A program made the position numbers and the translations under genes. Below, one piece after another: positions 1 through 58,536 of a stretch of 64,000 nucleotides of DNA (positions are counted from its first letter, which is position 1; every line of letters starts with the position of its first letter). The notes under the pieces were generated by a model, which was not told the origin of the DNA, did not search any database, and worked only from the letters and a program-made list of their open reading frames with translations. The stretch is taken from positions 124,001 to 188,000 of the IMG/VR virus record IMGVR_UViG_3300044701_003953. One strand, written 5' to 3'.

Positions 1-707
1 CCGACACCAAATCCGCACACTTGAGCAATCATGTGCGTGAACAGGCTGTAACTGGCTATGTTAAAAGGTACGCCCAGGAACATGTCACAACTGCGTTGAT
101 ACATCTGGCAACTGAGTTCATGGTTCTTGTTTACATAGAACTGCGCAAAGGCATGGCAAGGAGGTAGCGCCATGCTATCTAGTTCGCCAGGATTCCATGT
201 TGTGAGTATGTGACGCCGGCCGAATGGATCCTGCTTCAATCCTTCGATCAAAACTTTTAGTTGATCTGTTTCTTTGATGTGTAATGTGCCCTGGCGATTG
301 TATATGCTTCCAAAATCGTCTTTGAATGTTTCCGCTTTGTGTATGACAGGAGTGCGCCACTTGCGCCATTGTACTCCATATACCCTGCCCAAGTCGCCTT
401 CGTATTGTGCCTTTGGTTTCCAGTAAGGCGCTAATGCGTTTGGAGTCCAGATAGTAACTGGGCCTTCCCGTGTGCCGTGTGTAATTTCTGCTAGGCGACG
501 TTCGTCTCCCGACCCTTCAATGAACCAAAGCAGTTCGCCAACACATGCTTTCCATGCTAGTCGCTTGGTAGTGACTGCCGGGAAGCCTTGTCGTAGATCG
601 TATCTTTGTTGGAGCCCGAAAAGGGAGATCGTTCCTACTCCAGTGCGGTCATCTCTGACCTCACCATCATTCAATACTTGGGAGAGGGCGTTTAAATATG
701 CTTTCAT
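1..707 (-). CDS. thyA: Thymidylate synthase (runs off the left edge; absent from ORF track)
   Basis: Manual translation from ATG at 707: MKAYLNALSQVLNDGEVRDDRTGVGT...WNPGELDSMALPPCHAFAQF...YQRSCDMFLGVPFNIASY; catalytic PPCH and QRSCD motifs. Confidence 0.97.
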   Translation of the reverse strand, partial: MKAYLNALSQVLNDGEVRDDRTGVGTISLFGLQQRYDLRQGFPAVTTKRLAWKACVGELLWFIEGSGDERRLAEITHGTREGPVTIWTPNALAPYWKPKAQYEGDLGRVYGVQWRKWRTPVIHKAETFKDDFGSIYNRQGTLHIKETDQLKVLIEGLKQDPFGRRHILTTWNPGELDSMALPPCHAFAQFYVNKNHELSCQMYQRSCDMFLGVPFNIASYSLFTHMIAQVCGFGV

Positions 708-1185
708 ATTTCAAGAAGCTACATTGGAAATCGGGACTGGTGTCACAGCGTTTGACTTGGAATCCAGACAAGAACTCTTTGAGCTGTATACGGACATCGG
801 CTCTATGAGATCCCCTGAACACCGTCATATAGATATAGTCTAGGTAGCCTTGCATCTCCATCAGCAGGGCTGGCCCGCCGATGATGAATATCTTTTGATT
901 CTTATGTGCCTTCGCTACATTGGCCACCGCGGTTGGAAGGTCGCCCGAGATGGGTCTCCCATATAGCGGCAATGTCTGTGGTCTGTGCGTGTACACATAG
1001 CAGATCCGTCCTGGCAACGGTTTTGGAAATGTAGGATCGTCCCATGTTTTTCTTCCCATGACGAGCACATGCCCCATCGTCATCGATTGGAACCATTCCA
1101 TGTCGTACTTATTTTTTGGCCATGGTAACGTGCCAGCGTTGCCCATGGCACCGTTCATGTCGGTTGCGATTATAGCGTTTATCAT
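667..1185 (-). CDS. folA: Dihydrofolate reductase
   Basis: MINAIIATDMNGAMGNAGTLPWP, VMGRKTW, IFIIGG motifs; start moved to the Met at 1185; overlaps thyA start. Confidence 0.95.
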   Translation of the reverse strand: MINAIIATDMNGAMGNAGTLPWPKNKYDMEWFQSMTMGHVLVMGRKTWDDPTFPKPLPGRICYVYTHRPQTLPLYGRPISGDLPTAVANVAKAHKNQKIFIIGGPALLMEMQGYLDYIYMTVFRGSHRADVRIQLKEFLSGFQVKRCDTSPDFQCSFLKYESIFKRPLPSIE

Positions 1186-1186
1186 A

Positions 1187-1531
1187 TCAGAGATTTTTGA
1201 GTAATCTGTCAGTATAAGGTTGTACAGTCTTAGCAACCTTTTCTACACTGATCATAAAATCAACATCGTCGATAATTTCGTCCATTGCCTCGAGCCGATC
1301 ATTGATAGCCATCTCGAGATATTCCGGTTCATTGCCTTCGGAAAGTAACTGTTCTATATCAAGTACGACCTCTGTCCCGTCAGTGAGATTGATCCTGATT
1401 TTATCGATACAATGTAAGGGAACTTCACTTTTTTCTACGTCTTTAAGTATGCGTTCCCAGATCTGTTTGCGGGTATGGTTAAGCCGCTGCCTTTTGTTTT
1501 TTGGTGGTTGTTTTTTTGGTGGTGCGGGCAT
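1187..1531 (-). CDS. Hypothetical phage protein
   Basis: Intact 114-aa ORF in tight operon context. Confidence 0.7.
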   Translation of the reverse strand: MPAPPKKQPPKNKRQRLNHTRKQIWERILKDVEKSEVPLHCIDKIRINLTDGTEVVLDIEQLLSEGNEPEYLEMAINDRLEAMDEIIDDVDFMISVEKVAKTVQPYTDRLLKNL

Positions 1532-14518: not shown

Positions 14519-15043
14519 TTATCCTTCGTAGATGGCTGAGTTGGCTTCGTGCTCAAATACTTCCACAGAGCGTAACTTTACACCTTGTCCCACTGGATAA
14601 CGGGCAGAAAATGTTTTTCCATTGGGCAAGGTATATTCGCGACCTTGTTGATAGGTCTCAAGGATGTCTTGCATGGTGTTGTAGGCCAGTTCGGCGAATT
14701 TTTCGCAGCCCACTGCTTCCACGATGCGTAGGTCGCAAATGCCACCTTGCTCCTGGAGCCCCAACTTGGCCATGTTTTTAAAGATCTCAAGATGGGGATC
14801 ATCTGAGGCCACTACCAAAGTGTGATCGAACATGTATTCGCTCCACTCTTTGAATGCTTTCAGTCCACCGAAGTCCATAACCCAATTGCGATCATCAAGG
14901 GTAGTAGACTCAAATGCAAGACGAATGCCAATGCTATAACCATGCAATAGGCTGCAATGACTGTGAGTGCTACGCCATTGACGGAAACAGCACGAAAGGC
15001 CGCGGTCATTACCATAAGTTTTTGTTGAAAGGAATTTTGCCAT
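14519..15043 (-). CDS. queD: 6-carboxytetrahydropterin synthase
   Basis: HSHCSLLHGYS, WVMDFGGLK, FDHT, GCEKFAE, VEVFEH. Confidence 0.92.
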   Translation of the reverse strand: MAKFLSTKTYGNDRGLSCCFRQWRSTHSHCSLLHGYSIGIRLAFESTTLDDRNWVMDFGGLKAFKEWSEYMFDHTLVVASDDPHLEIFKNMAKLGLQEQGGICDLRIVEAVGCEKFAELAYNTMQDILETYQQGREYTLPNGKTFSARYPVGQGVKLRSVEVFEHEANSAIYEG

Positions 15044-18889: not shown

Positions 18890-19636
18890 TTATCTAGGTG
18901 CGTAGTCTTGCTGGAGTTTGATGTTGTCGATGAACTCTTTTTTCACGGCGGAGTCCAACTTAAATGCTCCATGTAGAACAGTAGTCTGGGTCAACGAACT
19001 ATGTGCCATGATGCCACGATTCTCGCAACAGCCGTGTGTGGCTTGGATATATACACCAACATCTTTGCTGTCAGTGGCCTTCATGATCTCACGAGCGATA
19101 TCATTACAGAGTTCTTCTTGTAAGGTTCCTCGGCGAGCACACCACTGTGCGATGCGAGTGTATTTGCTGAGGCCGATCAGTTTCTGTGCGGCAAGGATGC
19201 CAATATAAGCAACCCCAACAACGGGTTGATGATGATGGCTACACATACTACGAAGTTCACTACGAACCACGAGCATGCCCTCGTAACGGTCTTCCGAATC
19301 GTTTGGAAACGCTGTGCAATCTGGTGCTGGGTCATATCGACCTCCCATTATTTCGTTGAAGTACATCTTGGCCAATCGACGTGCTGTGCCCTTTGAATTG
19401 GGGTCGGTTTCCCTATCGATGAGCAAACGGTCTAGCACTAGTTCAAACGCTTCGGTGGCTTCGTCGATCAGTCGCGCTTTATCTTCTTCGCTTACATAGT
19501 CGCTGACATTATCGCCTGCCCAGAAACGCTTGTTATCACGTTTCATCTTGAAGCGGATAGCATCGCCTAAGTATGCTTCTTTGTAACCACTGTCGCCTGC
19601 CATCGCATCAAGTGCTGTTTGTTGTTTATCTGTCAA
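18890..19636 (-). CDS. folE: GTP cyclohydrolase I
   Basis: TARRLAKMY, SMCSHHHQP, GLSKYTR, LQEEL, HGCCENRG. Confidence 0.95.
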   Translation of the reverse strand: MTDKQQTALDAMAGDSGYKEAYLGDAIRFKMKRDNKRFWAGDNVSDYVSEEDKARLIDEATEAFELVLDRLLIDRETDPNSKGTARRLAKMYFNEIMGGRYDPAPDCTAFPNDSEDRYEGMLVVRSELRSMCSHHHQPVVGVAYIGILAAQKLIGLSKYTRIAQWCARRGTLQEELCNDIAREIMKATDSKDVGVYIQATHGCCENRGIMAHSSLTQTTVLHGAFKLDSAVKKEFIDNIKLQQDYAPR

Positions 19637-27858: not shown

Positions 27859-28962
27859 TTATACCAATAAAATTCTTCGTTTGGCGAAATTTTGGACTTC
27901 TTTGGGCAATAGATCAAACATTCGATCTCCTCGTAGTTTATCCATCATCAACGTATGTGCAATGGTATGGTGGAACAGATCTTCTGTGTTGCCTATCATT
28001 GATCGAGCCTGCTGATAGACACGTCGATTGTGATTTTGATTTCTGTCCGGCGCAAAATCAATTTCAGGCAGGAGGTCCTTTAACTCATAGGGCAAAGTCG
28101 ACAAAGAAAGGAAATCCGGTCCTTCTAATACTGATGTATTTAGAGTTATAGATTTATCTCGGCACCAATCTACCAATTCTTGTAGGAACCATATATTCAG
28201 TAGTCCCAGTGTGCAAAAAACAAATATTTCTGTGTCGGGTCTTTGCTTCCGATATGCCAGTAGAGATTCTATATTTTTTTCTGCACGATCCCAGTCTAAT
28301 CCCGATCTTACCATCTGCCCGGGCTCTCCGATAGCTTCCAGACTGGCATAGACTCTTGTCTTCTTAAAATGTTTCCAAAGTTCGGTGACTTCTTTTCCTC
28401 GGTAGTTTAAAGTAGTGAGGTTGGTATTGTATCTCAATGAAATGTTTCTGCTCCGACCATTTTCGATCAATGTATCTAACAATTTCCAATGATCGGGGTT
28501 TAGCATAGGTTCGCCGCCAGTGAAATAGATTTCTGTAAGTTCTTCGTTAGTGATTCCCTCTAACATAGGCCATACATTGAATCTTTCAAATTCGAGATCT
28601 CCGACCAAACTAGTCCAACTGCTACTGAAGTTGGGACTACAGATACGGCAAGTGAGATTGCAGGTGTTGTTGTTTCTGAGGTCGAGATATTTTATCGAAT
28701 CTCTTTGCCCAACATCGTCACCATAGTTTTTCCTGTAGGATTCTAAACCATTTTGCTCGTCTTCCCAACAACCTCGACAGCCTTGGGGACATGACCCCGA
28801 TAACATCTCTTGCTGTAGATCCTTAAAAGTATCTACCCCTTGGAAATTTTCCCCAGATCTGGCTAACTTGTAATCATAGATACAGCAAGGAGCAATCTTA
28901 CCGTCGGGGTAGACAGTGATGCTATTCCAAACGGCATTACAGATAAAAGGCTTGCCTGTCAT
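27859..28962 (-). CDS. Radical SAM protein with Cys-rich (SPASM/twitch-like) N-terminal region
   Basis: CNLTCRIC (CxxxCxxC), FTGGEP, YNTN; N-terminal C...PCC...CxxC. Confidence 0.85.
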   Translation of the reverse strand: MTGKPFICNAVWNSITVYPDGKIAPCCIYDYKLARSGENFQGVDTFKDLQQEMLSGSCPQGCRGCWEDEQNGLESYRKNYGDDVGQRDSIKYLDLRNNNTCNLTCRICSPNFSSSWTSLVGDLEFERFNVWPMLEGITNEELTEIYFTGGEPMLNPDHWKLLDTLIENGRSRNISLRYNTNLTTLNYRGKEVTELWKHFKKTRVYASLEAIGEPGQMVRSGLDWDRAEKNIESLLAYRKQRPDTEIFVFCTLGLLNIWFLQELVDWCRDKSITLNTSVLEGPDFLSLSTLPYELKDLLPEIDFAPDRNQNHNRRVYQQARSMIGNTEDLFHHTIAHTLMMDKLRGDRMFDLLPKEVQNFAKRRILLV

Positions 28963-36699: not shown

Positions 36700-36828
36700 T
36701 TAATTTCTAACTCAACGGTAGTTTTCTATTTTACTATCTTTTAAAAGATTAGTCAATAGACTTATGGTAGATTGTGCTGGGCCCGAGGGCCCAGGTTATG
36801 CTAAAATGGTTTTTCTAATACGACTTGT

Positions 36829-38112
36829 TCAGTGGAACTGCTCTTCCTCTGTGGAACCTTTGAGGGCTTGTGTGGATGCGTCAGCTTCGATGGTCGTAGT
36901 GACAGCGTCGAAGTAACCTGTGCCTACTTCCCTTTGATGCTTAACAGCTTCAAAACCACGGCTCGCATCCGCGAACTCACGTTCTTGTAACTCCACGAAA
37001 GCAGACATACCGTTCCTAGCATAACCATGAGCAAGGTCAAACATGCCATGATTAAGAGCATGGAATCCAGCAAGTGTGATGAATTGAAAACGGTAGCCCA
37101 TTGCTCCAAGTTCACGTTGGAAACGGCTAATTGTGTCTGCATCTAAGTTCTTCCTCCAGTTGAATGATGGCGAGCAGTTGTAGGCTAACATCTTACCTGG
37201 ATGGTGCTTGTGTACTTGCTCTGCGAATTCCTTCGCGAATTGTAAGTCGGGCTTTCCTGTTTCACACCACACGAGGTCTGCGTAAGGTGCGTAGGCGACG
37301 GCTCTGCTGACTGCTTGATCGATTCCGTTACGGGTTCTGTAGAATCCTTCAACAGTTCTTTCACCAGTAAGGAAAGGCTTGTCGTTGTCATCAATATCGC
37401 TAGTGATAAGGTCACCGGCTTCGGCATCAGTTCGTGCAATAACAAGAGTAGGCACGCCCATAACATCACTAGCGAGGCGAGCGGCAACAAGTTTATTGAT
37501 GGCTTCTCTGGTTGGTACAAGGACTTTTCCTCCCATGTGTCCGCATTTTTTAGCAGACGCTAATTGGTCTTCGAAGTGTACACCAGCGGCACCAGCTTCG
37601 ATCATGGCCTTCATCAGTTCAAATGCGTTTAACACGCCACCAAAGCCGGCTTCGGCATCAGCTACGATGGGTGCGAAGAAGTCGTGATCATCTTTACCTT
37701 CCATCCACTGTATCTGATCGGCACGACGAAACGTGTTGTTGATCTTGCGGACCACGGCGGGCACAGAGTTCACTGGATACAAGCTCTGATCAGGATACAT
37801 CTCTCCGGCCAAGTTGGCATCACCTGCCACTTGCCAACCGCTTAGGTATATGGCTTTGAGTCCTGCTTTGACTTGCTGTAACGCCTGCATGCCTGTCAAC
37901 GCACCCAAGGTGTTGACATAGTCCTCAGTGGTCAGTAGGTTCCATAATTTCTTGGCTTGGTCTATCGCGAACTGATCGGGATATACACGACTGCCTTGCA
38001 AGCGAACTACATCATCGGCGGTGTAGTCTCGTTTGATGCCCAACCACCTTGGGTTGGTACTCCAATCCTGTTGTATCTGATAGGCTTTCCAGCTACGAGT
38101 GTTTTCAGACAT
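36829..38112 (-). CDS. aceA: Isocitrate lyase
   Basis: KKCGHMGGK signature, [43 protein letters not shown]; GAGGAG RBS. Confidence 0.98.
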
Positions 38113-38138
38113 TAGTTGATCTCCTCAGTGTTCTTAGA

Positions 38139-38146
38139 TATTTATA
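38139..38146 (-). promoter_or_regulatory. T4-type late promoter upstream of aceA
   Basis: Exact TATAAATA about 27 nt before the ATG. Confidence 0.7.
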
Positions 38147-38230
38147 TTGCTCTGCAATAGCAAATTTCAATGTTGGCCGTACGGGTTTTTTCCGAACCCA
38201 GGAGCAGGCCATACCAAATATAGATCAGGG

Positions 38231-38981: not shown

Positions 38982-39416
38982 TTATTTGAGACTTGCTCTC
39001 AACATCCAGGAGTGTTTGCGGTGTGCGTCCATGCGCTCGGCCAGGAAGTTGGCAAGACCGTCTTCCCCAGCTTCAGTGGCCATGTCAAATACACGCTTAA
39101 GGATCTTGACCATCTTGTCAGAATCTTCTAGCAGTTCTTGGCACATGTCTTCAGCGGCTAGGATAGCAGTCTCGTCATCGACCATGCTGAGCATGGAGAA
39201 GCGGGTGAACGAGCCCGGGGTATAAGAATCTAGCTTGCGTATGTTTTCCGCGAACAGATCGATGCTACCGTATACTTCTTCGTAGATACCTCCAAACAGT
39301 TCGTGGAACTGTGCGAAGTGTATGCCTTCCACGTTCCAGTGGAAGTTGTGTGCTTTTAGATAAAACGCGAACTCGGATGAGAACGCGATCTTCATGGCTT
39401 TTTTAAGCTCGTCCAT
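38982..39416 (-). CDS. dps: Dps/ferritin-like protein
   Basis: KAHNFHWNVEG..F...HELF...YEE...D..AE; HRKHSWML. Confidence 0.93.
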   Translation of the reverse strand: MDELKKAMKIAFSSEFAFYLKAHNFHWNVEGIHFAQFHELFGGIYEEVYGSIDLFAENIRKLDSYTPGSFTRFSMLSMVDDETAILAAEDMCQELLEDSDKMVKILKRVFDMATEAGEDGLANFLAERMDAHRKHSWMLRASLK

Positions 39417-40219: not shown

Positions 40220-40564
40220 TTATTGTCCTGTCTTCTGTTGTGCTTTTTGTAGTGTATTCTTGATCTGTGGAGCAAGGGTAGGATCGGCTAATGCTTTTTC
40301 TACCGCCCCAGCGATACCTGCGGCATTGGCGGGATCTTCAGCATCTTTGTTGGGATCGATTTCGACACCAGCTCCTTTGAGTTGGTTGAGATTTTGTTTG
40401 AGTTTCTGTGCTTGCTGTGCAGCCTGCGCGGGATCAGAAGTCGTAGTTTGAGCATTGTCTGCTCCAAACTCACGCACACGCTTGATGGGTTTCTTGAATA
40501 AAGGTGTGGCTACTGTAGCGATAGCGCCGGAAGTTGTTTCTTTGATGATGTCGGTGATTTTCAT
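40220..40564 (-). CDS. Hypothetical protein, candidate internal head protein
   Basis: Probable start MKITDIIKET at 40564. Confidence 0.6.
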   Translation of the reverse strand: MKITDIIKETTSGAIATVATPLFKKPIKRVREFGADNAQTTTSDPAQAAQQAQKLKQNLNQLKGAGVEIDPNKDAEDPANAAGIAGAVEKALADPTLAPQIKNTLQKAQQKTGQ

Positions 40565-40586
40565 AACAATATTTATAATCCCAGAA

Positions 40587-40892
40587 TTAAATAGAAAACT
40601 CGAAATTTGCTGGTTGATCATTGATACGCACATTACTGATTCTCAGCATATCTCGTGGATCATTAAGTTTTTCTACCTTTAAGCGATGCGCCCCTGGCCC
40701 CAGCTTTACTGTGATCAGTTCTTCAACATAAGTGTCTTCGTGTTGCCAGACATAGGTACGTTCAGTCAAAAGATCCGAGTCCACATATATGCGATAGGCA
40801 GGTCGATACACATAAGCACCAGTTAACCCATGGGGTATATCTTCGCCGGACCAGCGTACATCAATACGTATCTCTATCTGCCGGTCATTCAT
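40587..40892 (-). CDS. Hypothetical beta-rich protein
   Basis: 101-aa ORF overlapping upstream stop. Confidence 0.6.
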   Translation of the reverse strand: MNDRQIEIRIDVRWSGEDIPHGLTGAYVYRPAYRIYVDSDLLTERTYVWQHEDTYVEELITVKLGPGAHRLKVEKLNDPRDMLRISNVRINDQPANFEFSI

Positions 40893-43792: not shown

Positions 43793-44539
43793 TTATTCTA
43801 CCGTCACGATCTCGTGGACATTTGTGATTATGCCCGGGCTGATCAACTCAACGAATGTGTTTATCGAAATATCGTTGGTGTAATAATATACTCCCCAAAA
43901 TGAAGAGTAAGACGAAGACAGCATTTTCCTTGGTGCCGCGGGCAGGCTGACAAGGTCCTCCATCGAAAGCAGGTAATTCAATAAGCTAGATTTCGATGCG
44001 GTATCTAATCTACCATCTCGTAACAATACTTTATAACGGTATTGGTTCCTTCGTGATTTCCTGAGTATCTTGTTTTCTTGTAACATCGGGATATGTTCAG
44101 GGCGTGGCACGCTGATAGAAAACACTCGCGACTGATCGACAGCAGTAAAATGCTCGATCACTTTTTTCAATGAGGTTTCATCCTCTGCGTAGACTTGTAT
44201 GTACGGTTCTTCGACCCTTAACTTGATAGTGTCATCTTTGAGCAGATCCTTGAACACTTCAAGCTGTGCGAGACTAGATTGGTCGAGCGATTTATTGTTA
44301 CGATATATCCAGCTACCGCCATGGTTCCTATGTACCACTCGTGTGTTTATAGATGATGATATATCCTCGTCGTGGATGGCCCTGCCGCCGGGGCAAAACA
44401 CCCTCATGCGGCACAGATATTTTTTAAAAAATATTTTCCGTGTCTCTTCGAAGACGACGACGGAGTTAAGATTGATCCAGTACAATATATCCATTGTTGT
44501 CCACGGCTGGTTGTAGTTTATAGTCGCCTTTAACATCAA
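43793..44539 (-). CDS. Hypothetical phage protein
   Basis: Long ORF following clpA; true start probably downstream of 44539. Confidence 0.65.
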   Translation of the reverse strand: MMLKATINYNQPWTTMDILYWINLNSVVVFEETRKIFFKKYLCRMRVFCPGGRAIHDEDISSSINTRVVHRNHGGSWIYRNNKSLDQSSLAQLEVFKDLLKDDTIKLRVEEPYIQVYAEDETSLKKVIEHFTAVDQSRVFSISVPRPEHIPMLQENKILRKSRRNQYRYKVLLRDGRLDTASKSSLLNYLLSMEDLVSLPAAPRKMLSSSYSSFWGVYYYTNDISINTFVELISPGIITNVHEIVTVE

Positions 44540-46751
44540 AGACTACTTCATGATCGACGACACTAACTACTACTGTTGATCCCGGCGATAGCTTTTCAAA
44601 CAAGATCTTCTTGCTAAGTGGGACCTTCACCATTTCGTTGATTTTGCGAGCTAACGGACGAGCACCCAACTTGGGATCATACCCAACCTCTGCGAAATAA
44701 TTAACCGCGGTCTCTGTGAAATGCACACGCAGATTCTTATCACTGAGCAGTTCATTCATTTCCGACATGAGCTTGATCACGATCTTCTTCATGCTGAGAT
44801 GATCCAATTTGCCGAATTTACAGATGCCGTCGAGTCGATTGCGGAACTCTGGCTTGAAAAAGTCTTTGACTGCTTTATCATCTTCGCCGACTTTCTGGAA
44901 ATTCCTACCTATACCGATGGCATTCTTTTCTGAGTCTGCGGCACCCAGGTTGGAAGTCAATATCACGATAGTGTTGCGGCAATCGGCTTTCTTACCATTG
45001 CTGGAAGTGATCATACCCTCATCCATGAGGTTCAGTAAGACATTAGTGACATCGGGGTGTGCTTTTTCGATCTCATCAAACAGGATAACAGAGTTAGGAT
45101 TCTTCTCTACATCGCTGATCAAGAGTCCGCCACCGAGATTACTATCGTCGTAGCCTACATAGCCCGGGGGAGCACCAATCAGCTTAGATGCCGAATGCTT
45201 CTCTTGATATTCGCTCATGTCATAGCGTAATAATTTCATGCCCAAGTTATCAGCCAGGGCTTTCGCTAGTTCTGTCTTACCTGTGCCAGTGGGGCCGATA
45301 AACAGGAAATTGCCAATTGGTTTGTTGATAGCCTTGAGTCCGGCTTTGCTGACATAGATCTTTTCCAATACTTGGTCAACCACCGAATCTTGTCCAAATA
45401 CACGATCTTTAATACGATTTTCAAAATCATCGACGTCCTTGATCTCGTCGCTATCTCCGATCTGATCTGCAGGAATCTTGGTAAACTTGCTGATGGCTTC
45501 TACGATCTGGCTCTTGCCCACGATCCAATCATTGAGATGTATCTTGGATTTGGCGCAGGCTGTGTCAATAAGATCGATAGCCTTGTCTGGTAGTTTCTTG
45601 TCAGTCTGGTATCTCACGCTGAGATCTACAGCGGCATCGATAGCTTCGTCGGTAATCTTACCTCCGTGAAATTCTTCAAAGTAATTACGCAATCCTCGTA
45701 ATATGTCTTTGGCCACAACCGGACTTGGCTCCTCGATCGCCAACCTATGGAATCTGCGCATAAGAGCTCGATCTTTCTCGAAACTCTGTGTGAATTCTTC
45801 CCAGGTAGTAGATGCGATTACTTTGATGTGACCTTTGCTTAGGGCCGGCTTAATCATGTTAGCAAAGTCTACGCTGGAGTTAGATCCCGAACCGGCACCT
45901 CTCATCTGATGCGCTTCGTCAATGAATAGTATGCACTTACCGATAGCATGTAAAGCCGCGATTACTTCTTTGAGTTTTTCTTCGAATTCGCCACGATATT
46001 TGCTGCCGGCTAGTAGTCCGCCGATGTCGAGATTGTAAACAGTGAAGTCTTTGAGATAATCAGGCACTTCACCGTTGATGATGTTTAATGCTAACCCTTC
46101 GGCTATCGCGGTTTTGCCTACACCAGGATCGCCCACCATCAAGACATTGCTCTTGTTGCGCTTGGCTAGGATTTGTGTAATTTCGGCTATCTCGACTTCG
46201 CGACCAATCACGGGATCGATCTTGCCTTTTTCTGCCATCTCATTGAGATTGTCACAGAACTCCTTTAGTATTTCTGCTGCCTTGGCCTTGTTTGATGCCC
46301 CGGCTTCTTTTCGTTTGTCTTGCCAATTTTCGTTGTAATAGTCGACTAATCCGCTGCGGTCGATGCCGTACTTCATCAGAAAATAAGTAGCATGGCTGTT
46401 GCCTTCTTGCCATATGCTCAACACCAAATCGATGACTTGTATATGAGTGCGTCCCGAGAATAACACCTGAGTGAATGCTCGATTAAACACACGCTCGAGC
46501 GCATGTGTTTTTTTAGGAACATCGTCTTTGTCTGCCGAAGCTAGATGCTCTTGTGTTGTCAAGTACATCAACAACTCGTTGGACATGCCCTCGACGTTTA
46601 CACCATAATTGTTTAGAAATTCATTAAAAGGTTTATAGGTCAAAAGACCCTGTAATAGATGCTCTACAGTCACGTATTTGTGTCGTAGTTGGCGTGCTGC
46701 TGTAGTGGCATATTCTACGATCATTTCTATTTCAGGATTGGGTTGTATCAT
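44466..46751 (-). CDS. clpA: ClpA-like Clp ATPase (Hsp100)
   Basis: Clp-N domain, GDPGVGKT, FIDEAH, GPTGTGKT, LFDEIEKAHPDV, FKPEFRNRLD, GARPL. Confidence 0.93.
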   Translation of the reverse strand: MIQPNPEIEMIVEYATTAARQLRHKYVTVEHLLQGLLTYKPFNEFLNNYGVNVEGMSNELLMYLTTQEHLASADKDDVPKKTHALERVFNRAFTQVLFSGRTHIQVIDLVLSIWQEGNSHATYFLMKYGIDRSGLVDYYNENWQDKRKEAGASNKAKAAEILKEFCDNLNEMAEKGKIDPVIGREVEIAEITQILAKRNKSNVLMVGDPGVGKTAIAEGLALNIINGEVPDYLKDFTVYNLDIGGLLAGSKYRGEFEEKLKEVIAALHAIGKCILFIDEAHQMRGAGSGSNSSVDFANMIKPALSKGHIKVIASTTWEEFTQSFEKDRALMRRFHRLAIEEPSPVVAKDILRGLRNYFEEFHGGKITDEAIDAAVDLSVRYQTDKKLPDKAIDLIDTACAKSKIHLNDWIVGKSQIVEAISKFTKIPADQIGDSDEIKDVDDFENRIKDRVFGQDSVVDQVLEKIYVSKAGLKAINKPIGNFLFIGPTGTGKTELAKALADNLGMKLLRYDMSEYQEKHSASKLIGAPPGYVGYDDSNLGGGLLISDVEKNPNSVILFDEIEKAHPDVTNVLLNLMDEGMITSSNGKKADCRNTIVILTSNLGAADSEKNAIGIGRNFQKVGEDDKAVKDFFKPEFRNRLDGICKFGKLDHLSMKKIVIKLMSEMNELLSDKNLRVHFTETAVNYFAEVGYDPKLGARPLARKINEMVKVPLSKKILFEKLSPGSTVVVSVVDHEVVFDVKGDYKLQPAVDNNGYIVLDQS

Positions 46752-46833: not shown

Positions 46834-47682
46834 TTATTGACCTTTTTTGAGTTCTTCTAACAATTCTTTCCGGTGGTGATCGGTCTCTTTGGGAATATAG
46901 ACTTCGACTTCAACTAAGAGATTCCCCCGCGCCCCATTAGTTGAGTATAGTCCTTGATCTTTGATCCTTAATTTAGTTCCGTATTGTGTGCCCGGTGGCA
47001 CTGTTAATAAAAAAGTCTTGTTTTCGAGATTGGTTATTTCTCTCTGTGTGCCCAGGATCGCATCGTAGGCTGATATTTTAAGCGAGCAAACGATGTCTGA
47101 GTGATGTACTCGGAACCTTGGGTGCGGAATTAGGCGCACCAATACATAGAGATCTCCGCGCGGCAAGGTACTAAAAAAGTTGTCGCCTAACCCGGGATAT
47201 TTGATCATTGATCCGTCTTCGACACCGCGGGGGATATTGATGTTGATTGTTTCTCGGTAACCATTGGTAGTTTGTATCTGTATGGTTTTTCCGACGGGAT
47301 TTAAAGTTTCCTCAAGACCCAATCCCATTTCTATCCTGATGTCTTTGTTGCGCCGCGGCTGACGCATGCGTTCAAAGGGATCTTCAGAACGATTCCGGAA
47401 CCCGAAGTTAAATTGAGTGAATATGTCGTCGAGATCGGGCATACCGTCGGTGTCTTGATTCCAACGAAATTGCGGACCGCCGCCAAAACCTTTTCTTTCG
47501 AGATCGTATCGTTGTCGAGATTCGGGATTACTAAGCACACGATATGCTTCTTCGATACGCTGGAACTCATCCGTATTACCACCTTTATCGGGGTGATGTT
47601 TGGACGCTAGGCGGCGATAGGCTTTTTTAATCTCTTCGGGCGTAGCCGTTTCGGTTACTTTAAGGGTGTCGTAGTGAGACAT
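46834..47682 (-). CDS. dnaJ: DnaJ/CbpA-type co-chaperone (no Zn finger)
   Basis: J-domain with HPD, G/F linker, C-terminal GDLYV and PGTQ motifs. Confidence 0.9.
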
Positions 47683-54440: not shown

Positions 54441-55727
54441 TCAGATAGTGGAGATGACCTGTAGAGCAGTCCATATGACTTTGTCCCCCAGGATAAACGC
54501 GAATAGCATGGGAATAGGATCGATGTTCTTTTTATCTAGTGCATAACCGATCGCGCTAAAAAACAAGAACAAGCAAACATATTTCAATGCTCCCAACTCT
54601 GAATAGTAGAAATCTATCAACCCCAGGCCTGCTATCAACAACAACAGTATGAATCTAAATCTCGACTGTAGAAACAACAGGGCACGAGCATAGACGTCCA
54701 ACAAACTGGTACTCAGGAAGTAGTAGATCACAGCCAGCAACACACAGGCCAGTTGTATGGTCAACAACATACGACCCACTTCTTCGAGATTGGCCAGGTC
54801 CGGCCAGTCAATGAGTTTGGTCTGCAGGATCTGTAACACTATGACTTCACCCACAGTGATGGGTATGCCCACGATCAACAACGGTAACATGCTAGTGATC
54901 ATGGCCGAGTTGTTGGCCGATTCTGCCGAAGTGACTTTTTTACTCAAATCTTTTTCGGTGTGGAACGCCAAGTTGCTGCTCAAAGTCGCCGACGGTCCTG
55001 GTATGAGCCCGATCATGCTGCCAATGACGCCGCCTTTGACAGCACTGGTCCATGGCATATCACCAATCACAGATTCAGCATTACGAGATTGCCATATTTC
55101 ACTGTCATATTTTTTAAACAGCTCGGGCACGATCAACAAGCCCAAGGCCATGGAAAAAAACGTGGTGTTCTGGAAAGTCTCTTGTAAGTGATACCAGGCT
55201 TCTGGCAAAGCATAATTGTTTTTTGGGCCCAGTAGAATACCAAACATCACTAACACCAATGCCACCGGTCTGTTTTTACTGAGTAATACAAAAAACAACA
55301 ATGCGAATCCGAAGATCACGGCCTTGACCCAGATTTTGTTGAACCAAAACATGAAATCGTACGACCCCAGCACAAACACAGCCACACATGCCACTGATGC
55401 AGCCACAGATGCTACCACTGATCCACGTGCGGTGTATTTGATCAGTTTGATACGATCTTTGATGCCCAAGGGTTTGATCGAATTCAAGTAGATCAAACTC
55501 GACGTTTCGCCAGGTACACCAGTGGTTATGGCAGCCACGCTGCCAAAATACTGCGACCCAATGATCACGGCTGCCCAGTATAGGAATATGTCAAACACCG
55601 ACATGAATTCCACAAACGGGAACATCAACATCATGCCCAAAGCAATAGGCATGGCCGGGAAAAGTCCTACCAACATCCCGGCCATGATTCCTGAAACAAA
55701 AGTTATGATTGTTGAAAGTTCGATCAA
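54441..55727 (-). CDS. tctA: TctA-family tripartite tricarboxylate transporter permease
   Basis: GSQYFGSVAAITTGVPGETSS, GLIPGPSATL, SAESANNSA, LIVGIPIT; polytopic; TTG start. Confidence 0.85.
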   Translation of the reverse strand: MIELSTIITFVSGIMAGMLVGLFPAMPIALGMMLMFPFVEFMSVFDIFLYWAAVIIGSQYFGSVAAITTGVPGETSSLIYLNSIKPLGIKDRIKLIKYTARGSVVASVAASVACVAVFVLGSYDFMFWFNKIWVKAVIFGFALLFFVLLSKNRPVALVLVMFGILLGPKNNYALPEAWYHLQETFQNTTFFSMALGLLIVPELFKKYDSEIWQSRNAESVIGDMPWTSAVKGGVIGSMIGLIPGPSATLSSNLAFHTEKDLSKKVTSAESANNSAMITSMLPLLIVGIPITVGEVIVLQILQTKLIDWPDLANLEEVGRMLLTIQLACVLLAVIYYFLSTSLLDVYARALLFLQSRFRFILLLLIAGLGLIDFYYSELGALKYVCLFLFFSAIGYALDKKNIDPIPMLFAFILGDKVIWTALQVISTI

Positions 55728-55785: not shown

Positions 55786-56475
55786 TCAGTGGGTGGGTTT
55801 GAGAGCGCCGGTCTTGCTGGCCAAGATGAGTTGTGTGCGGTTCTGCACACCGTATCGTCGAATGATGGCCGATACATGACCTTTGACGGTGTCTTCGCTG
55901 ACCTGTAAGATCTCAGCTATCTTGCGATTGGGCAGGCCGCGTTGTGTGATCAACTTGAACACTTCGGCCTGGCGATCCGTGAGACCGATCTCTCGCTTGC
56001 GCACCACTGCTCGCTGGAGTTCGGGTTTGACCACGATGCTGGGCCAGTGGCTTTCACCGCGGGCCAGAGTCTGATATGCTGTCACTGAATGTTCAGCATC
56101 AAAGAATCGCATGCCCGGAATCACGCCTAGAACATCGTTGCGTTTGAGTTTGGCCAAGAGATCGGCGTCCAGGAGTTCGGGTACTACCACAGCGATGTCC
56201 ACCCGCTGGCGCTCGGCCACGAAGCGCGACAACGATGACAGCATGCTCAACACTTCGTCGATCATCATGTCATTGCGTTCCAGACAGTCCAAGCGGAACA
56301 CCACCAAGGCGTCCTCGGGCTCTTCGAGCTGGCGCATGAGATTGGGCCAGCCGGCTGTGATGGTTATGGCGATGCCTACCGCGGCATGATGGTCGACCAC
56401 ACGCTGGATAGACTCCAACTCGACCTCAGAATCGGTGCTGGGCGAGAAGTAAATGATTTTTCGGGATTTGGCCAT
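55786..56475 (-). CDS. LuxR/NarL-type HTH transcription regulator with degenerate receiver-like domain
   Basis: LTDRQAEVFKLI..GLPNRKIAEIL.VSEDTVKGHVSAI.R..GVQNRTQL. Confidence 0.88.
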   Translation of the reverse strand: MAKSRKIIYFSPSTDSEVELESIQRVVDHHAAVGIAITITAGWPNLMRQLEEPEDALVVFRLDCLERNDMMIDEVLSMLSSLSRFVAERQRVDIAVVVPELLDADLLAKLKRNDVLGVIPGMRFFDAEHSVTAYQTLARGESHWPSIVVKPELQRAVVRKREIGLTDRQAEVFKLITQRGLPNRKIAEILQVSEDTVKGHVSAIIRRYGVQNRTQLILASKTGALKPTH

Positions 56476-56619
56476 TTTGTTGATTTTACTATGACCTGGT
56501 GTTGCCTGTCAAGGCCGTAAATGCGGGTATGGAGGAATTTGGTTAGCCAAATATTTAGTAGTCAGTGACAAAAAAGAACTCTTCTGTTTTTATACGAGCA
56601 TATGGGTACCTAAATATCT

Positions 56620-57390
56620 GTGTCACTTCCGCCAAAGGAGGCACACTTGACCAAAAGAAAACATCGCGACTCATATTCGCATCATCCGCAAGCCCTTCAA
56701 CAACAGCACATAGACTACGAACATTATCGATCAAATCGACAAAATATACAGCTCATCCCTAAGAGTCTTGGGCAAGAGAGGTATATAGAGTTGCTGACCG
56801 ACCCAGCACGAACGATCATATTCGCCACAGGCCCAGCCGGTACTGGCAAGACCATGTTGGCGGTGTTGGCAGCACTGCGAGCACTCAAGAATGGCGAGTG
56901 CAAGAAGATAGTGATCACTAGACCGGCAGTGGGTGTAGATGACGAGAAGCACGGTTTCCTACCCGGAGACTTGAACCAAAAGATGGAACCCTGGACCCGT
57001 CCCATATTCGACTACATGGGCGAATATATGAGACCCCAGGAAATCGCAAGGATGCTAGACGAACAGATCGTGGAAATTTCCCCACTGGCATTCATGAGAG
57101 GACGCACATTTAAAAATGCGTGGATCATCGCAGACGAAATGCAGAATGCCACGCCCTCGCAGATGAAGATGCTGCTTACGCGACTCGGCGAAGGTTCCCG
57201 TATGGTAGTAACTGGTGACACGAAACAAGCAGATCGCCAGGACCCTGACAACGGACTACTTGATTTCAAGAAAATAGTAGCAGATTATGATGGAAAATTA
57301 CTACATATTTCCGGTGTAGAGTTTGATTATCGTGATATAAAGCGCCACCCAGCGGTGTCAGAAGTACTAAAACTTTACGGTGAAATCTAA
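56620..57390 (+). CDS. phoH: PhoH-like ATPase
   Basis: GPAGTGKT, ITRPAV, GFLPGDL..K..PW, PLAFMRGRT, DEMQN, GD.KQAD; TAAATA at 56611. Confidence 0.95.
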   Translation: MSLPPKEAHLTKRKHRDSYSHHPQALQQQHIDYEHYRSNRQNIQLIPKSLGQERYIELLTDPARTIIFATGPAGTGKTMLAVLAALRALKNGECKKIVITRPAVGVDDEKHGFLPGDLNQKMEPWTRPIFDYMGEYMRPQEIARMLDEQIVEISPLAFMRGRTFKNAWIIADEMQNATPSQMKMLLTRLGEGSRMVVTGDTKQADRQDPDNGLLDFKKIVADYDGKLLHISGVEFDYRDIKRHPAVSEVLKLYGEI

Positions 57391-57447
57391 AGGTTTTTGC
57401 CATAATCATAAATAAAGTTATCATATCACTCAATGGAGACTTCCCCA

Positions 57448-58536
57448 ATGACACAATTAACTGGAAAAAATGGACGTAGAAAAGTCCGTTGGATCATAGC
57501 TCACTTCCCACTAGAACTGTTTGTTCGTGCGGCCAAGGCATTTCAGCTCGAAATTGAAAAACTTTGCCCCGGGCAGTTCGACATCGAGATCCATACTATC
57601 GGTTCTTATCTAAGAGCTTACGGTAACGAACTCACTGAAGAACAGAAAAAGAATCTTGGATTCGTGGCCCCACGTATTCCTGGACTCGAAGATCCCAAGA
57701 ACACAGTTGCAACTAAAAACCCAGACAGCCTAGTTTTTGCTAAAGACTTCAACCAACTCAAAGTTTGGTGGAAGACATTGTTTGAGGTGATGAAAGAGCA
57801 GAAGTTTGAGATGAGCCAGACACAGGTCAACATCGTTGGTAGCCATCTGCACACCAACTTCCATGCCATCGATCTTCCTTACCTTTTCAAAGATCACGAT
57901 CACGTAGCTAAAGTACTCGACGGCGAAGTCGGACAAAAGATCAGCGACCAAGTAGCAAAAGACACTGGTGTAAAAGCACTGGGTTACACATACTCGGGCG
58001 GATATCGAATCATCGGTAGTACCGAGGGTATTACAAAACTTGATGATCTTAAAGAAAAGAAATTCATCAGCTTTACTGCACCTAGCAATATGTTGTTCAG
58101 ACTCGCAGACGTACCACGTCTTCCACGTTACCTCACAACAGCAGAAGACCTCGGTGATATCGCTGAGCAAGGTGGTGCCATTGAGACCACATATCTGCGC
58201 TTTGCTGGTAAGAATGTTCTTAAAACAAACCACAGCATGTTCATGACATCGATCCTGACCAGCGAAAACTTCATAAATTCGTTAACAGAAGACCAGCGTG
58301 CCGCTTTTACAGAAGCTGCACATCGTGTTGCCAAAATCGAAAGACTTTGGTCTGTTGAAGATGCCGCCAAGTATGAGCAGGATGCTGAAAGCCGTGGCGT
58401 TACTATCGTTCCAGTTAACGAAGAAGACGACACAAGACTCAGAACAGCAGCCAAGGAAATTTACAAGAAAGAAAATCTTGAGAAGATTGGTATCGACTAC
58501 ACATTAGTAGAAGAAATCATCAAACTCGGTAAGTAA
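57448..58536 (+). CDS. dctP: Second DctP-family substrate-binding protein, no signal peptide
   Basis: AIDLPYLFKDHDHV, LGYTYSGGYRII; GGAG RBS favours the start at 57448; ATAAATA at 57408-57414. Confidence 0.82.
   Translation: MTQLTGKNGRRKVRWIIAHFPLELFVRAAKAFQLEIEKLCPGQFDIEIHTIGSYLRAYGNELTEEQKKNLGFVAPRIPGLEDPKNTVATKNPDSLVFAKDFNQLKVWWKTLFEVMKEQKFEMSQTQVNIVGSHLHTNFHAIDLPYLFKDHDHVAKVLDGEVGQKISDQVAKDTGVKALGYTYSGGYRIIGSTEGITKLDDLKEKKFISFTAPSNMLFRLADVPRLPRYLTTAEDLGDIAEQGGAIETTYLRFAGKNVLKTNHSMFMTSILTSENFINSLTEDQRAAFTEAAHRVAKIERLWSVEDAAKYEQDAESRGVTIVPVNEEDDTRLRTAAKEIYKKENLEKIGIDYTLVEEIIKLGK

What the first reader, a model, noticed from the sequence alone, without database searches (positions are those of the whole stretch)
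36829..38146. Isocitrate lyase under an exact T4-type late promoter
A full-length aceA has all catalytic motifs and TATAAATA just upstream, so it appears integrated into phage late regulation rather than being host contamination. With TctA/TctC (tricarboxylate uptake family) and the phasin, it suggests a dispersed module routing citrate or PHA-derived acetyl-CoA through the glyoxylate shunt (inference). No malate synthase is seen in the window.
Basis: partly seen in the sequence, partly recalled or inferred. Interest (0 to 1): 0.6.

Follow-up and report, generated by a model that had tools for sequence, protein, structure and literature searches.

The report
Jumbo-phage isocitrate lyase with late promoter
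A large bacteriophage carries a working-looking copy of the host enzyme isocitrate lyase behind the phage's own late-gene signal and a retained host control site; such phage genes are already known, so only the control region is new.

Summary
Window 36829-38112(-) encodes a 427-aa isocitrate lyase. It passes NCBI's ICL equivalog models, and every motif stretch, KKCGH included, is identical to solved ICL 3i4e. TATAAATA lies 26 nt before its ATG.

The exact 8-mer is not enriched: 2 in the window (1.65 expected), 6 in the 207.5-kb virus record. Its core TAAATA is the phage's real upstream signal:
- It is 11.6-fold enriched before ORF starts, including tail sheath, tail tube, baseplate hub and lysis-like genes.
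- The record encodes a gp55-type late sigma factor.
- 24 distinct relatives keep TAAATA 19-31 nt before their ICL ATG although the flanks differ.

The ICL belongs to a 46-member phage clade nested in Burkholderiales ICLs, with dN/dS about 0.08.

Malate synthase is absent here and in three 91-100% complete relatives. TctA is real. "TctC" was not found (a DctP-type protein instead), and no phasin was found.

New here: a palindrome abutting the TAAATA box matches the PHB-responsive PhaR/PhbF operator. It is homologous to the region upstream of host aceA. This suggests host PhaR gates the phage ICL, which is inferred and untested.

Phage ICLs are already published (98 huge phages), so the gene itself is a new member of a known kind.

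The parts
36829..38112 (-). Isocitrate lyase (aceA-type) coding sequence, 427 aa, intact
   Evidence: It passes ICL equivalog cut-offs, and every catalytic motif stretch is identical to solved ICL 3i4e. dN/dS against phage relatives is 0.06-0.10.
38121..38126 (-). Shine-Dalgarno-like GAGGAG, 8 nt before the ATG
   Evidence: Read from the sequence. An AGGAG-like block is kept at the same place in relatives.
38139..38146 (-). TATAAATA. Its core TAAATA (38139-38144) is the phage's late-type promoter box, 26 nt before the ATG.
   Evidence: One search gives the position. Searches show the genome-wide enrichment upstream of ORFs. Searches show it upstream of structural and lysis-like genes. Searches show it kept 19-31 nt before the ICL ATG in 24 distinct relatives.
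38147..38159 (-). Palindrome TATTGCAGAGCAA (arms TTGC/GCAA around 3 nt), directly abutting the TAAATA box. It is a PhaR/PhbF-type operator candidate, one mismatch from TG[N]TGC[N]3GCAA.
   Evidence: It is the only intergenic copy in the 207.5-kb record. The arms are kept while the centre varies in relatives. It is homologous to the host aceA upstream region. The same motif lies before phasin genes of Burkholderiales. Published PhbF footprint: PMC3206438.
38165..38170 (-). TTGAAA, a -35-like hexamer 18 nt upstream of TATAAA (basis of the sigma-70 rival)
   Evidence: Read from the sequence. The consensus scan did not call a sigma-70 promoter here.
36777..36794 (-). G+C-rich hairpin 35 nt after the ICL stop codon, without a T-run. 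A possible 3' end of the unit.
   Evidence: centroid -15.7 kcal/mol, z -2.2.
36728..36756 (-). Sigma-70-like promoter TTGACT-17-TAAAAT for the next gene downstream, which marks ICL as a separate unit
   Evidence: 10 of 12 consensus positions.

Best explanation
This is a functional isocitrate lyase carried as an auxiliary metabolic gene by a jumbo myophage of about 320-350 kb that is distantly T4-related. Its DNA polymerase is nearest to Sinorhizobium phage Phosso, Agrobacterium phage Atu_ph07 and Rak2/GAP32-like phages. The gene appears to have been captured once from a Burkholderiales bacterium, together with part of the host aceA 5' control region. It has since been inherited in the phage lineage under strong purifying selection. 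In this phage it looks like a single-gene unit, read from the phage's own late-type promoter (core TAAATA, presumably recognised by the phage's gp55-like sigma factor). The phage has no malate synthase. The enzyme would therefore add isocitrate-cleaving capacity to the infected cell and rely on the host's malate synthase, pushing acetyl-CoA carbon into C4 acids instead of CO2 while virions are built. Shown: gene identity and integrity, phage clade and donor group, selection, motif statistics and conservation, gp55 homologue, absence of malate synthase. Inferred: transcription start and timing, enzyme activity, metabolic benefit. More tentative: host PhaR binds the palindrome abutting the promoter, so the phage ICL would be made only when PhaR is titrated by PHB.
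For: Identity. Phage context: T4-family DNA polymerase, terminase, tail sheath and other phage genes on one 207.5-kb IMG/VR record. Spread: 67 viral loci carry ICL at 60-90% identity. Tree: 46 phage ICLs form one clade (SH-aLRT 98), nested among Burkholderiales ICLs that are 74-79% identical. Selection: dN/dS median 0.076 with synonymous sites near saturation. Promoter: TAAATA is 11.6-fold enriched upstream of ORFs. It lies 19-34 nt before tail tube, tail sheath, head-tail adaptor, a structural protein and the baseplate hub, and 5-7 nt before the called starts of terminase large subunit and a virion structural protein. It also precedes holin-like and Glyco_hydro_19-like genes. A gp55-type sigma factor is encoded at G000:69517-70467(-), phrog_234 E 1e-23 and phrog_12791 E 1e-83. 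The same sigma family is in all three near-complete relatives. TAAATA is kept 19-31 nt before the ICL ATG in 24 distinct sequence contexts. Where it is missing, ICL is a distal gene of an operon headed by a TAAATA box. Malate synthase PF01274 is absent from this record and from relatives that are 91%, 93% and 100% complete. Operator.
Against: There is no expression data. The only public runs holding related sequence are weak and contain fragments of relatives about 91% identical. The exact T4 8-mer is not enriched. TAAATA also precedes genes that are not obviously late, such as a methyltransferase, Dps and PhoH, so 'late' timing is by analogy with T4. gp33 and gp45 co-factors were not looked for. 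The record is only 59% complete by CheckV, so a malate synthase on the missing part cannot be excluded for this phage itself. The host is unknown. The window's palindrome departs from the PhbF consensus at one position. One sublineage (L033, L038 and L047 types) has no operator. The phages encode neither PhaR nor phasin.
Confidence: 0.6

Rival explanations
1. The TATAAATA is incidental. ICL is transcribed by unmodified host sigma-70 RNA polymerase from a host-like promoter, or by read-through, so it is an early or constitutive gene rather than a late one.
For: The exact 8-mer is at chance frequency. TTGAAA lies 18 nt upstream of TATAAA in the window. TTGTCA lies 17 nt upstream of ATAAAT in L006, L007, L013, L022 and L025. 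The region descends from a host aceA promoter.
Against: The would-be -10 lacks the conserved final T, and the sigma-70 scan did not call it. Several relatives, such as L004, L019 and L020, have no -35 at proper spacing yet keep TAAATA at the same distance from the ATG. TAAATA is the top enriched upstream word of the genome and heads structural genes.
Confidence: 0.2
2. The enzyme's role is not the glyoxylate shunt. It could act as a methylisocitrate lyase (propionate detoxification), or supply glyoxylate or succinate for other uses, which would explain why no malate synthase travels with it.
For: No malate synthase in three near-complete relatives. From established knowledge, some bacterial ICLs such as M. 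tuberculosis ICL1 also cleave methylisocitrate. ICL1 is among the close solved relatives.
Against: The protein scores far above the ICL equivalog cut-offs and far below the prpB ones: 107 bits against a 354-bit cut-off. The likely hosts, Burkholderiales, commonly have their own malate synthase (general knowledge, not tested here).
Confidence: 0.12
3. The palindrome next to the promoter is not a PhaR site. It is a relic of the captured host promoter (its -35 region), or a site for some other regulator, and it has no role in the phage.
For: The motif is short. TG[N]TGC[N]3GCAA occurs 47-165 times per Burkholderiales genome, mostly in coding DNA. One phage sublineage lost it. The window copy has one mismatch.
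Against: The arms are kept while the 3-nt centre and the flanks vary, across phage ICLs whose synonymous sites are saturated. 11 of 49 distinct phage upstream regions have a perfect TGC-N3-GCA core against about 2.4% expected, always abutting TAAATA. The same extended motif flanks the -35/-10 of 8 of 8 phasin genes in the same host group.
Confidence: 0.4
4. The ICL is host DNA: a mis-assembly, a mis-binned contig, or a host gene beside a prophage.
For: It is 74-79% identical to Burkholderiales ICLs. A few database 'phage' hits are really bacterial contigs.
Against: It is embedded among phage genes on the same strand, with similar G+C. It is closer (up to 90%) to 46 other viral-contig ICLs that form their own clade. 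It sits in 316-337-kb phage genomes, one with terminal repeats.
Confidence: 0.02

Closest known systems
ICL (and malate synthase) genes of huge phages (Huge Phage Genome Collection, bioRxiv 10.1101/2025.02.27.640493)
   Same: An ICL carried by phages over 200 kb from freshwater and other habitats. Most lack malate synthase: 98 ICL against 22 malate synthase genes.
   Different: The passages found there by term search cover gene presence and adjacency only. Shown here in addition: one Burkholderiales-derived phage clade, purifying selection, the TAAATA promoter and the operator-like palindrome.
aceBA operon of a 179-kb marine T4-like environmental viral genome (Nishimura et al. 2017, PMC5332604), and aceAB reads in Pacific viromes (PMC4053976)
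   Same: A glyoxylate-shunt enzyme carried by a T4-related phage as an auxiliary metabolic gene.
   Different: Those carry malate synthase next to ICL, as do the distant loci L064-L067 here. The present clade has ICL alone, from a different donor.
T4 late transcription (gp55 sigma factor, TATAAATA at -10)
   Same: A gp55-family sigma factor is encoded, and an A/T-rich box containing TAAATA lies before structural genes and before ICL.
   Different: The sigma protein is 316 aa against 185 aa in T4 and is best matched by another PHROG. The conserved word is (A)TAAATA(C/T), not the full 8-mer. gp33 and gp45 were not examined.
PhaR/PhbF/AniA regulon of PHB-accumulating bacteria (PMC3206438; bioRxiv 10.1101/2025.02.17.638283)
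   Same: The palindrome type is TG[N]TGC[N]3GCAA, or YGCRNYGCR, overlapping a promoter. An ICL-family protein lies in the PhaR-repressed module of S. meliloti.
   Different: Here the site sits in a phage genome in front of a phage promoter box. Binding is untested, and the phage encodes neither PhaR nor phasin.
Cyanophage pstS/phoA controlled by the host PhoBR system
   Same: A phage auxiliary metabolic gene whose expression depends on a host regulator that reports host nutrient status.
   Different: A different regulator, signal (phosphate against stored carbon) and phage group. Here it is only a prediction.

Membership tests
Isocitrate lyase (AceA, EC 4.1.3.1) | Whole-protein match to curated ICL models above their cut-offs | tested here: met
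   NF011645 scores 776.5 bits (cut-off 562). TIGR01346 scores 619.8 bits (cut-off 275.9). PF00463 E 8e-108.
Isocitrate lyase (AceA, EC 4.1.3.1) | Catalytic loop K-K-C-G-H and the Mg/substrate-binding stretches | tested here: met
   These stretches are all identical to solved ICL 3i4e in the alignment. The roles of the residues are from established ICL structural work, recalled rather than re-derived.
Isocitrate lyase (AceA, EC 4.1.3.1) | Cleaves isocitrate to glyoxylate and succinate | not testable with these tools
   Needs an enzyme assay or aceA complementation.
Methylisocitrate lyase (PrpB) | Match to prpB equivalog above its cut-off | tested here: not met
   TIGR02317 scores 107 bits against a cut-off of 354.
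T4-type late gene (gp55-dependent promoter) | TATAAATA-like box a short distance upstream of the gene | tested here: met
   38139-38146(-), 26 nt before the ATG.
T4-type late gene (gp55-dependent promoter) | The box is the genome's recurrent signal before late (structural or lysis) genes | tested here: met
   Met for the core TAAATA. Not met for the exact 8-mer, which occurs 6 times in 207.5 kb.
T4-type late gene (gp55-dependent promoter) | The phage encodes a gp55-family sigma factor | tested here: met
   G000:69517-70467(-), phrog_234 E 1e-23 and phrog_12791 E 1e-83. Also found in relatives.
T4-type late gene (gp55-dependent promoter) | gp33 co-activator and gp45 sliding-clamp activator | not tested
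   Not searched.
T4-type late gene (gp55-dependent promoter) | Transcript starts just downstream of the box, late in infection | tested here: inconclusive
   Public runs hold only weak fragments of relatives, kept as contigs, so they show neither starts nor timing.
Glyoxylate-shunt module (aceA plus aceB/glcB) | Malate synthase encoded alongside ICL | tested here: not met
   PF01274 is absent from G000 and from G002, G009 and G010, which are 91-100% complete. It is present only in the distant loci L064-L067.
Tripartite tricarboxylate transporter (TctABC) | TctA membrane subunit | tested here: met
   Window 54441-55727(-), PF01970 E 5e-34, covering the full profile.
Tripartite tricarboxylate transporter (TctABC) | TctC binding protein | tested here: not met
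   No PF03401 match in the record. The binding protein at 57433-58536(+) is a DctP/TRAP type. TctB was not searched.
Phasin (PhaP) | Match to the Phasin_2 family | tested here: not met
   No PF09361 match at E <= 1 in G000 or four relatives. None appeared among the 50 window ORFs scanned with Pfam. Other phasin families were not searched on their own.
PhaR/PhbF operator | Sequence TG[N]TGC[N]3GCAA (core TGC-N3-GCA) overlapping a promoter | tested here: met
   The window copy has one mismatch, with a perfect core and perfect TTGC/GCAA arms. Exact matches occur in L019, L028, L035 and L036. The consensus is from PMC3206438.
PhaR/PhbF operator | Same motif before bona fide PhaR targets (phasin genes) in the donor group | tested here: met
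   8 of 8 phasin genes in five Burkholderiales genomes have 1-2 sites flanking their -35/-10.
PhaR/PhbF operator | Bound by PhaR and released by PHB | not testable with these tools
   Needs EMSA or footprinting and reporter assays.

The most novel reading that the evidence does not exclude
When the phage lineage captured aceA, it kept the host's PHB-responsive PhaR/PhbF operator and fused it directly to its own late promoter box. The phage would then read the host's carbon-storage state. Free PhaR (no PHB) would block the late promoter. PhaR titrated onto PHB granules would free it, so ICL is made only in cells with a PHB reserve whose acetyl-CoA can be routed through the shunt. This would be a phage late gene gated by a host storage-polymer sensor. 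It would also place aceA in the PhaR regulon of many Burkholderiales.
Probability: 0.35. Interest if true: 0.72.

Novelty: new member of a known kind. Interest (0 to 1): 0.5.

Why it matters
Phage-borne ICL genes are now counted in the hundreds, but nothing is known about when or why they are expressed. This locus gives a concrete, testable control region of about 50 bp. It combines a late-type promoter box shared with the phage's structural genes and a palindrome that matches a footprinted host repressor site. If the repressor link holds, a jumbo phage would tune an auxiliary metabolic gene to the host's stored carbon. That would parallel the phosphate-sensing control described for cyanophage genes, and it would add aceA to the PhaR regulon in Burkholderiales. 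If it fails, the locus is still a clean example of a single capture of a central-metabolism gene, kept for a long time under selection without its pathway partner.

Tried and rejected
1. Expression evidence: the look-up of sequencing runs gave only two weak holders, a lake-water and a wastewater 'RNA-Seq' metagenome with word shares of 0.05 and 0.04. Laying them showed short contigs about 91% identical to the 3' part of ICL, so they come from relatives. This says nothing on transcript ends or timing.

2. The exact TATAAATA as a genome-wide promoter was rejected. There are only 6 copies in 207.5 kb.

3. The palindrome as a genome-wide phage regulon was rejected. The ICL copy is the only good intergenic one. 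The other intergenic TGC-N3-GCA is a terminator stem.

4. A genome-wide pattern search in five host genomes was not discriminating, because the 13-mer occurs 47-165 times per genome. I replaced it with direct inspection of phasin and aceA upstream regions.

5. Phasin and PhaR genes in the phage were not found. TctC was not found.

6. Conserved gene order around ICL was rejected. Only L005 and L019 share the window's neighbours.

7. A sigma-70 promoter call at the ICL upstream region was not made by the scan.

8. The large protein searches, structure prediction and complex prediction were not used. The family scans and a solved close homologue left nothing open for them.

Full report
**What is in the sequence**

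The minus-strand ORF 36829..38112 starts with ATG and encodes 427 residues. It is an isocitrate lyase by every sequence test available:
- Pfam ICL matches at E 8e-108.
- NCBIfam equivalog NF011645 scores 776.5 bits against a cut-off of 562, and TIGR01346 scores 619.8 against 275.9. The methylisocitrate-lyase model reaches only 107 bits against 354.
- It aligns over its full length to solved ICLs, best to 3i4e at E 8e-221. The catalytic KKCGH loop and all other motif stretches are identical.

TATAAATA lies at 38139-38146(-), 26 nt before the ATG, and GAGGAG lies 8 nt before the ATG.

**Is the TATAAATA more than chance?**

As an exact 8-mer, no. There are 2 copies in the window against 1.65 expected. 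There are 6 on both strands of the whole 207,520-bp record.

As a member of the phage's own motif class, yes. A k-mer screen of the 80 nt upstream of 212 ORFs put TAAATA first, in 47 ORFs against 4.1 expected. ATAAATA appeared in 22 against 1.5 expected. Of the 106 TAAATA copies in the record, 47 lie within 60 nt upstream of a same-strand start, most often 20-30 nt.

The box lies 19-34 nt before the tail tube, tail sheath, head-tail adaptor, a structural protein and the baseplate hub. It lies 5-7 nt before the called starts of the terminase large subunit and a virion structural protein, where those starts may be miscalled. In the window it also precedes a holin-like ORF and a Glyco_hydro_19-like ORF. 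I chose these ORFs because they carry the box, so this shows that structural genes have it, not that only late genes do.

The record encodes a gp55-type late sigma factor at G000:69517-70467(-). T4 gp55 belongs to phrog_234 and also hits phrog_12791. The phage ORF matches these at E 1e-23 and 1e-83.

**What the genome is**

The window is bases 124001-188000 of an IMG/VR virus record. The record is linear, and CheckV estimates it at 59% complete. Most of its ORFs (163 of 212) lie on one strand, and 95% of it is coding.

Its family-B DNA polymerase is closest to Sinorhizobium phage Phosso (51%), Agrobacterium phage Atu_ph07 (49%) and the Rak2/GAP32-type jumbo phages (42-43%). Relatives that carry the same ICL clade and the same sigma family are 316-337 kb long. 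One has terminal repeats and is rated 100% complete. This is therefore a jumbo myophage with a T4-like core.

**Relatives, origin and selection**

Sixty-seven IMG/VR loci encode an ICL 60-90% identical to this one. The nearest cellular ICLs (74-79%) are almost all from Burkholderiales, such as Caldimonas, Inhella, Rubrivivax, Aquabacterium, Undibacterium, Pandoraea, Ralstonia and Burkholderia. A few come from Lysobacteraceae.

In a maximum-likelihood tree of 141 rows, 46 phage ICLs including the window's form one clade with SH-aLRT 98. That clade sits inside the Burkholderiales radiation, and its exact sister is unresolved. More distant phage ICLs (L056-L067, phage C48C1) fall outside it. The bacterial rows are the 80 best hits to the query, so sampling is biased towards near relatives. 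The tree used the quick search without the mixture model.

Within the phage clade, dN/dS is 0.06-0.12 (median 0.076), with synonymous sites near or at saturation. The gene has therefore been kept working in phages for a long time.

Flanking genes are shared only with the two nearest relatives, L005 and L019. The gene sits in a variable part of these genomes.

**The promoter is conserved with the gene**

In 33 loci, giving 24 distinct 80-nt contexts, TAAATA lies 19-31 nt before the ICL ATG, while the surrounding intergenic sequence is largely unalignable.
- L004 has a clear intrinsic terminator just upstream of the box.
- L053 has a tRNA there.
- Several others have a divergent gene there.

The box therefore travels with ICL as its own start signal. 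In the sublineage without a box next to ICL (L033, L038 and L047 types), ICL follows one to three ORFs closely, and a TAAATA box heads that group.

In the window, a G+C-rich hairpin follows the stop codon. The next gene has its own sigma-70-like promoter. This is consistent with a single-gene unit.

**A host operator retained at the promoter**

Directly abutting the box, the window has TATTGCAGAGCAA (38147-38159). The TTGC and GCAA arms are inverted repeats around 3 nt. It is the only good intergenic copy in the whole record.

Relatives keep the arms while the centre varies (AGA, GAA, ACT, ATA, TCT, ATC, GGG, AGC). Eleven of 49 distinct phage upstream regions have a perfect TGC-N3-GCA core against about 2.4% expected, always next to TAAATA. 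Fourteen of 24 box-bearing contexts fit a slightly relaxed pattern.

The motif equals the site of PhbF, the PhaR homologue of Herbaspirillum seropedicae, which is itself a member of Burkholderiales. That site, TG[N]TGC[N]3GCAA, was found by MEME and confirmed by DNase footprinting, and PhbF represses the promoters that carry it (PMC3206438). L019, L028, L035 and L036 match it exactly. The window has one mismatch.

Three comparisons tie this site to the host:
- Upstream of bacterial aceA, 29 of 76 Burkholderiales loci carry the core against about 5% expected. In Oxalobacteraceae it follows a second conserved palindrome, GTCTTATATAAGAC.
- The upstream region of phage L020 aligns with that of Undibacterium aceA over 38 nt, covering both elements. 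The score has z = 10.7, and 0 of 200 shuffles reached it. The phage region is therefore homologous to the host control region. The phage TAAATA sits where the host has AAAATAT.
- In five of those host genomes, all 8 phasin genes carry one or two copies of the same extended motif. In the clearest cases these flank a TTGAC / TAGAAT-type promoter, the classic PhaR arrangement.

In Sinorhizobium meliloti, an ICL-family protein belongs to the PhaR-repressed module, and the PhaR motif there is YGCRNYGCR (bioRxiv 10.1101/2025.02.17.638283).

The phages encode neither PhaR nor phasin, so any control would have to come from the host protein. This part is inference from sequence. No binding has been tested.

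- TctA is real (54441-55727(-), PF01970 E 5e-34), but it lies 17 kb away.
- No TctC (PF03401) was found in the record.
- The solute-binding protein at 57433-58536(+) is of the DctP/TRAP type.
- No Phasin_2 match exists in this record or in four relatives, and none appeared among the 50 window ORFs scanned.
- Nothing links TctA to ICL by shared motif.
- Malate synthase is absent from the record. More tellingly, it is absent from relatives rated 91%, 93% and 100% complete. It is present next to ICL only in the distant clade L064-L067.

**How it most likely works**

The phage makes its own ICL from a late-type promoter and relies on the host's malate synthase. The extra ICL would pull isocitrate away from the two decarboxylating steps. 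Carbon from acetyl-CoA (acetate, fatty acids, mobilised PHB) would then be kept as C4 acids for amino-acid, nucleotide-precursor and sugar synthesis while particles are assembled.

If the palindrome is a working PhaR site, this would happen only in cells whose PhaR is tied up on PHB. The gene, its integrity, its history, the motif statistics and the sigma factor are shown. Start site, timing, activity and benefit are inferred.

**Comparison with what is known**

Phage ICLs are established in the literature:
- aceAB reads in Pacific viromes (PMC4053976);
- an aceBA operon in a 179-kb T4-like marine genome (PMC5332604);
- 98 ICL and 22 malate synthase genes in 98 huge phages, with malate synthase confined to marine, soil and plant samples (bioRxiv 10.1101/2025.02.27.640493).

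The window's gene is thus a new member of a known kind. The passages I retrieved from those papers do not describe the single Burkholderiales-derived phage clade, the conserved TAAATA promoter, or the PhaR-type operator inherited with the gene.

**Limits**
- No transcript data could be obtained. The two public runs found hold only fragments from relatives.
- ORF calls for the motif statistics come from a simple longest-ORF caller of my own.
- The host is not identified.
- gp33 and gp45 were not searched.

Noticed in passing
host loci L083-L162, 60-200 nt upstream of aceA: A 14-nt palindrome, GTCTTATATAAGAC, is conserved upstream of aceA across many Burkholderiales (Sphaerotilaceae, Oxalobacteraceae, Ralstonia, Burkholderia, Pandoraea). 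It looks like an operator for an unidentified aceA regulator. A degenerate half survives in phage loci L020, L023 and L024.
   Followed up: partly
window 18890-19636(-), 14519-15043(-), 27859-28962(-), 667-1236(-): GTP cyclohydrolase I, a 6-pyruvoyl-tetrahydropterin synthase (QueD-like), a radical-SAM protein and a dihydrofolate reductase lie in the window. This set is reminiscent of 7-deazaguanine or folate pathways used by some phages for DNA modification.
   Followed up: no
window 38982-39416(-): A Dps/ferritin-like protein (PF00210 E 3e-21) lies two genes upstream of ICL, with a TAAATA box 49 nt before its start. Homologues sit near ICL in four related loci.
   Followed up: partly
window 54441-55727(-), 55786-56475(-), 56620-57390(+), 57433-58536(+): An orphan TctA, a LuxR-type HTH protein, PhoH and a DctP/TRAP-type solute-binding protein are clustered together. 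A one-mismatch copy of the PhbF-like 13-mer (TGTTGCCTGTCAA) lies at 56500-56512, between the LuxR-type gene and phoH.
   Followed up: no
window 44466-46751(-), 46834-47682(-): A 761-aa Clp-type ATPase (phrog_4871, E 2e-244) lies next to a full DnaJ (J domain plus C-terminal domain). The phage carries its own chaperone and unfoldase pair.
   Followed up: no
G000:80976-95126(+) (outside the window): A single ORF of 4,716 aa lies in the structural region, with a TAAATA box 22 nt before its start.
   Followed up: no
window 40570-40577(-): The only other exact TATAAATA in the window lies inside the long reading of ORF 40220-40633, 5 nt before an internal ATG. The true start of that gene may be the internal one.
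   Followed up: no
loci L064-L067 (records G019-G022): A separate, more distant group of viral contigs (ICL 60-67% identical) carries malate synthase close to ICL. This matches the published marine aceBA type. These records lack the phrog_12791 sigma family.
   Followed up: partly
L001 (phage C48C1, OQ984149.1, 44175-45416): A deposited 156-kb Kyanoviridae-classified phage genome has an ICL homologue (58.6% identity) that is annotated only as 'hypothetical protein'. It sits on a very long branch in the tree.
   Followed up: partly
loci L043, L045, L046: Three 'viral' contigs carry ICLs that group with Burkholderiaceae MAG sequences rather than with the main phage clade. They could be separate captures or mis-classified bacterial DNA.
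   Followed up: no
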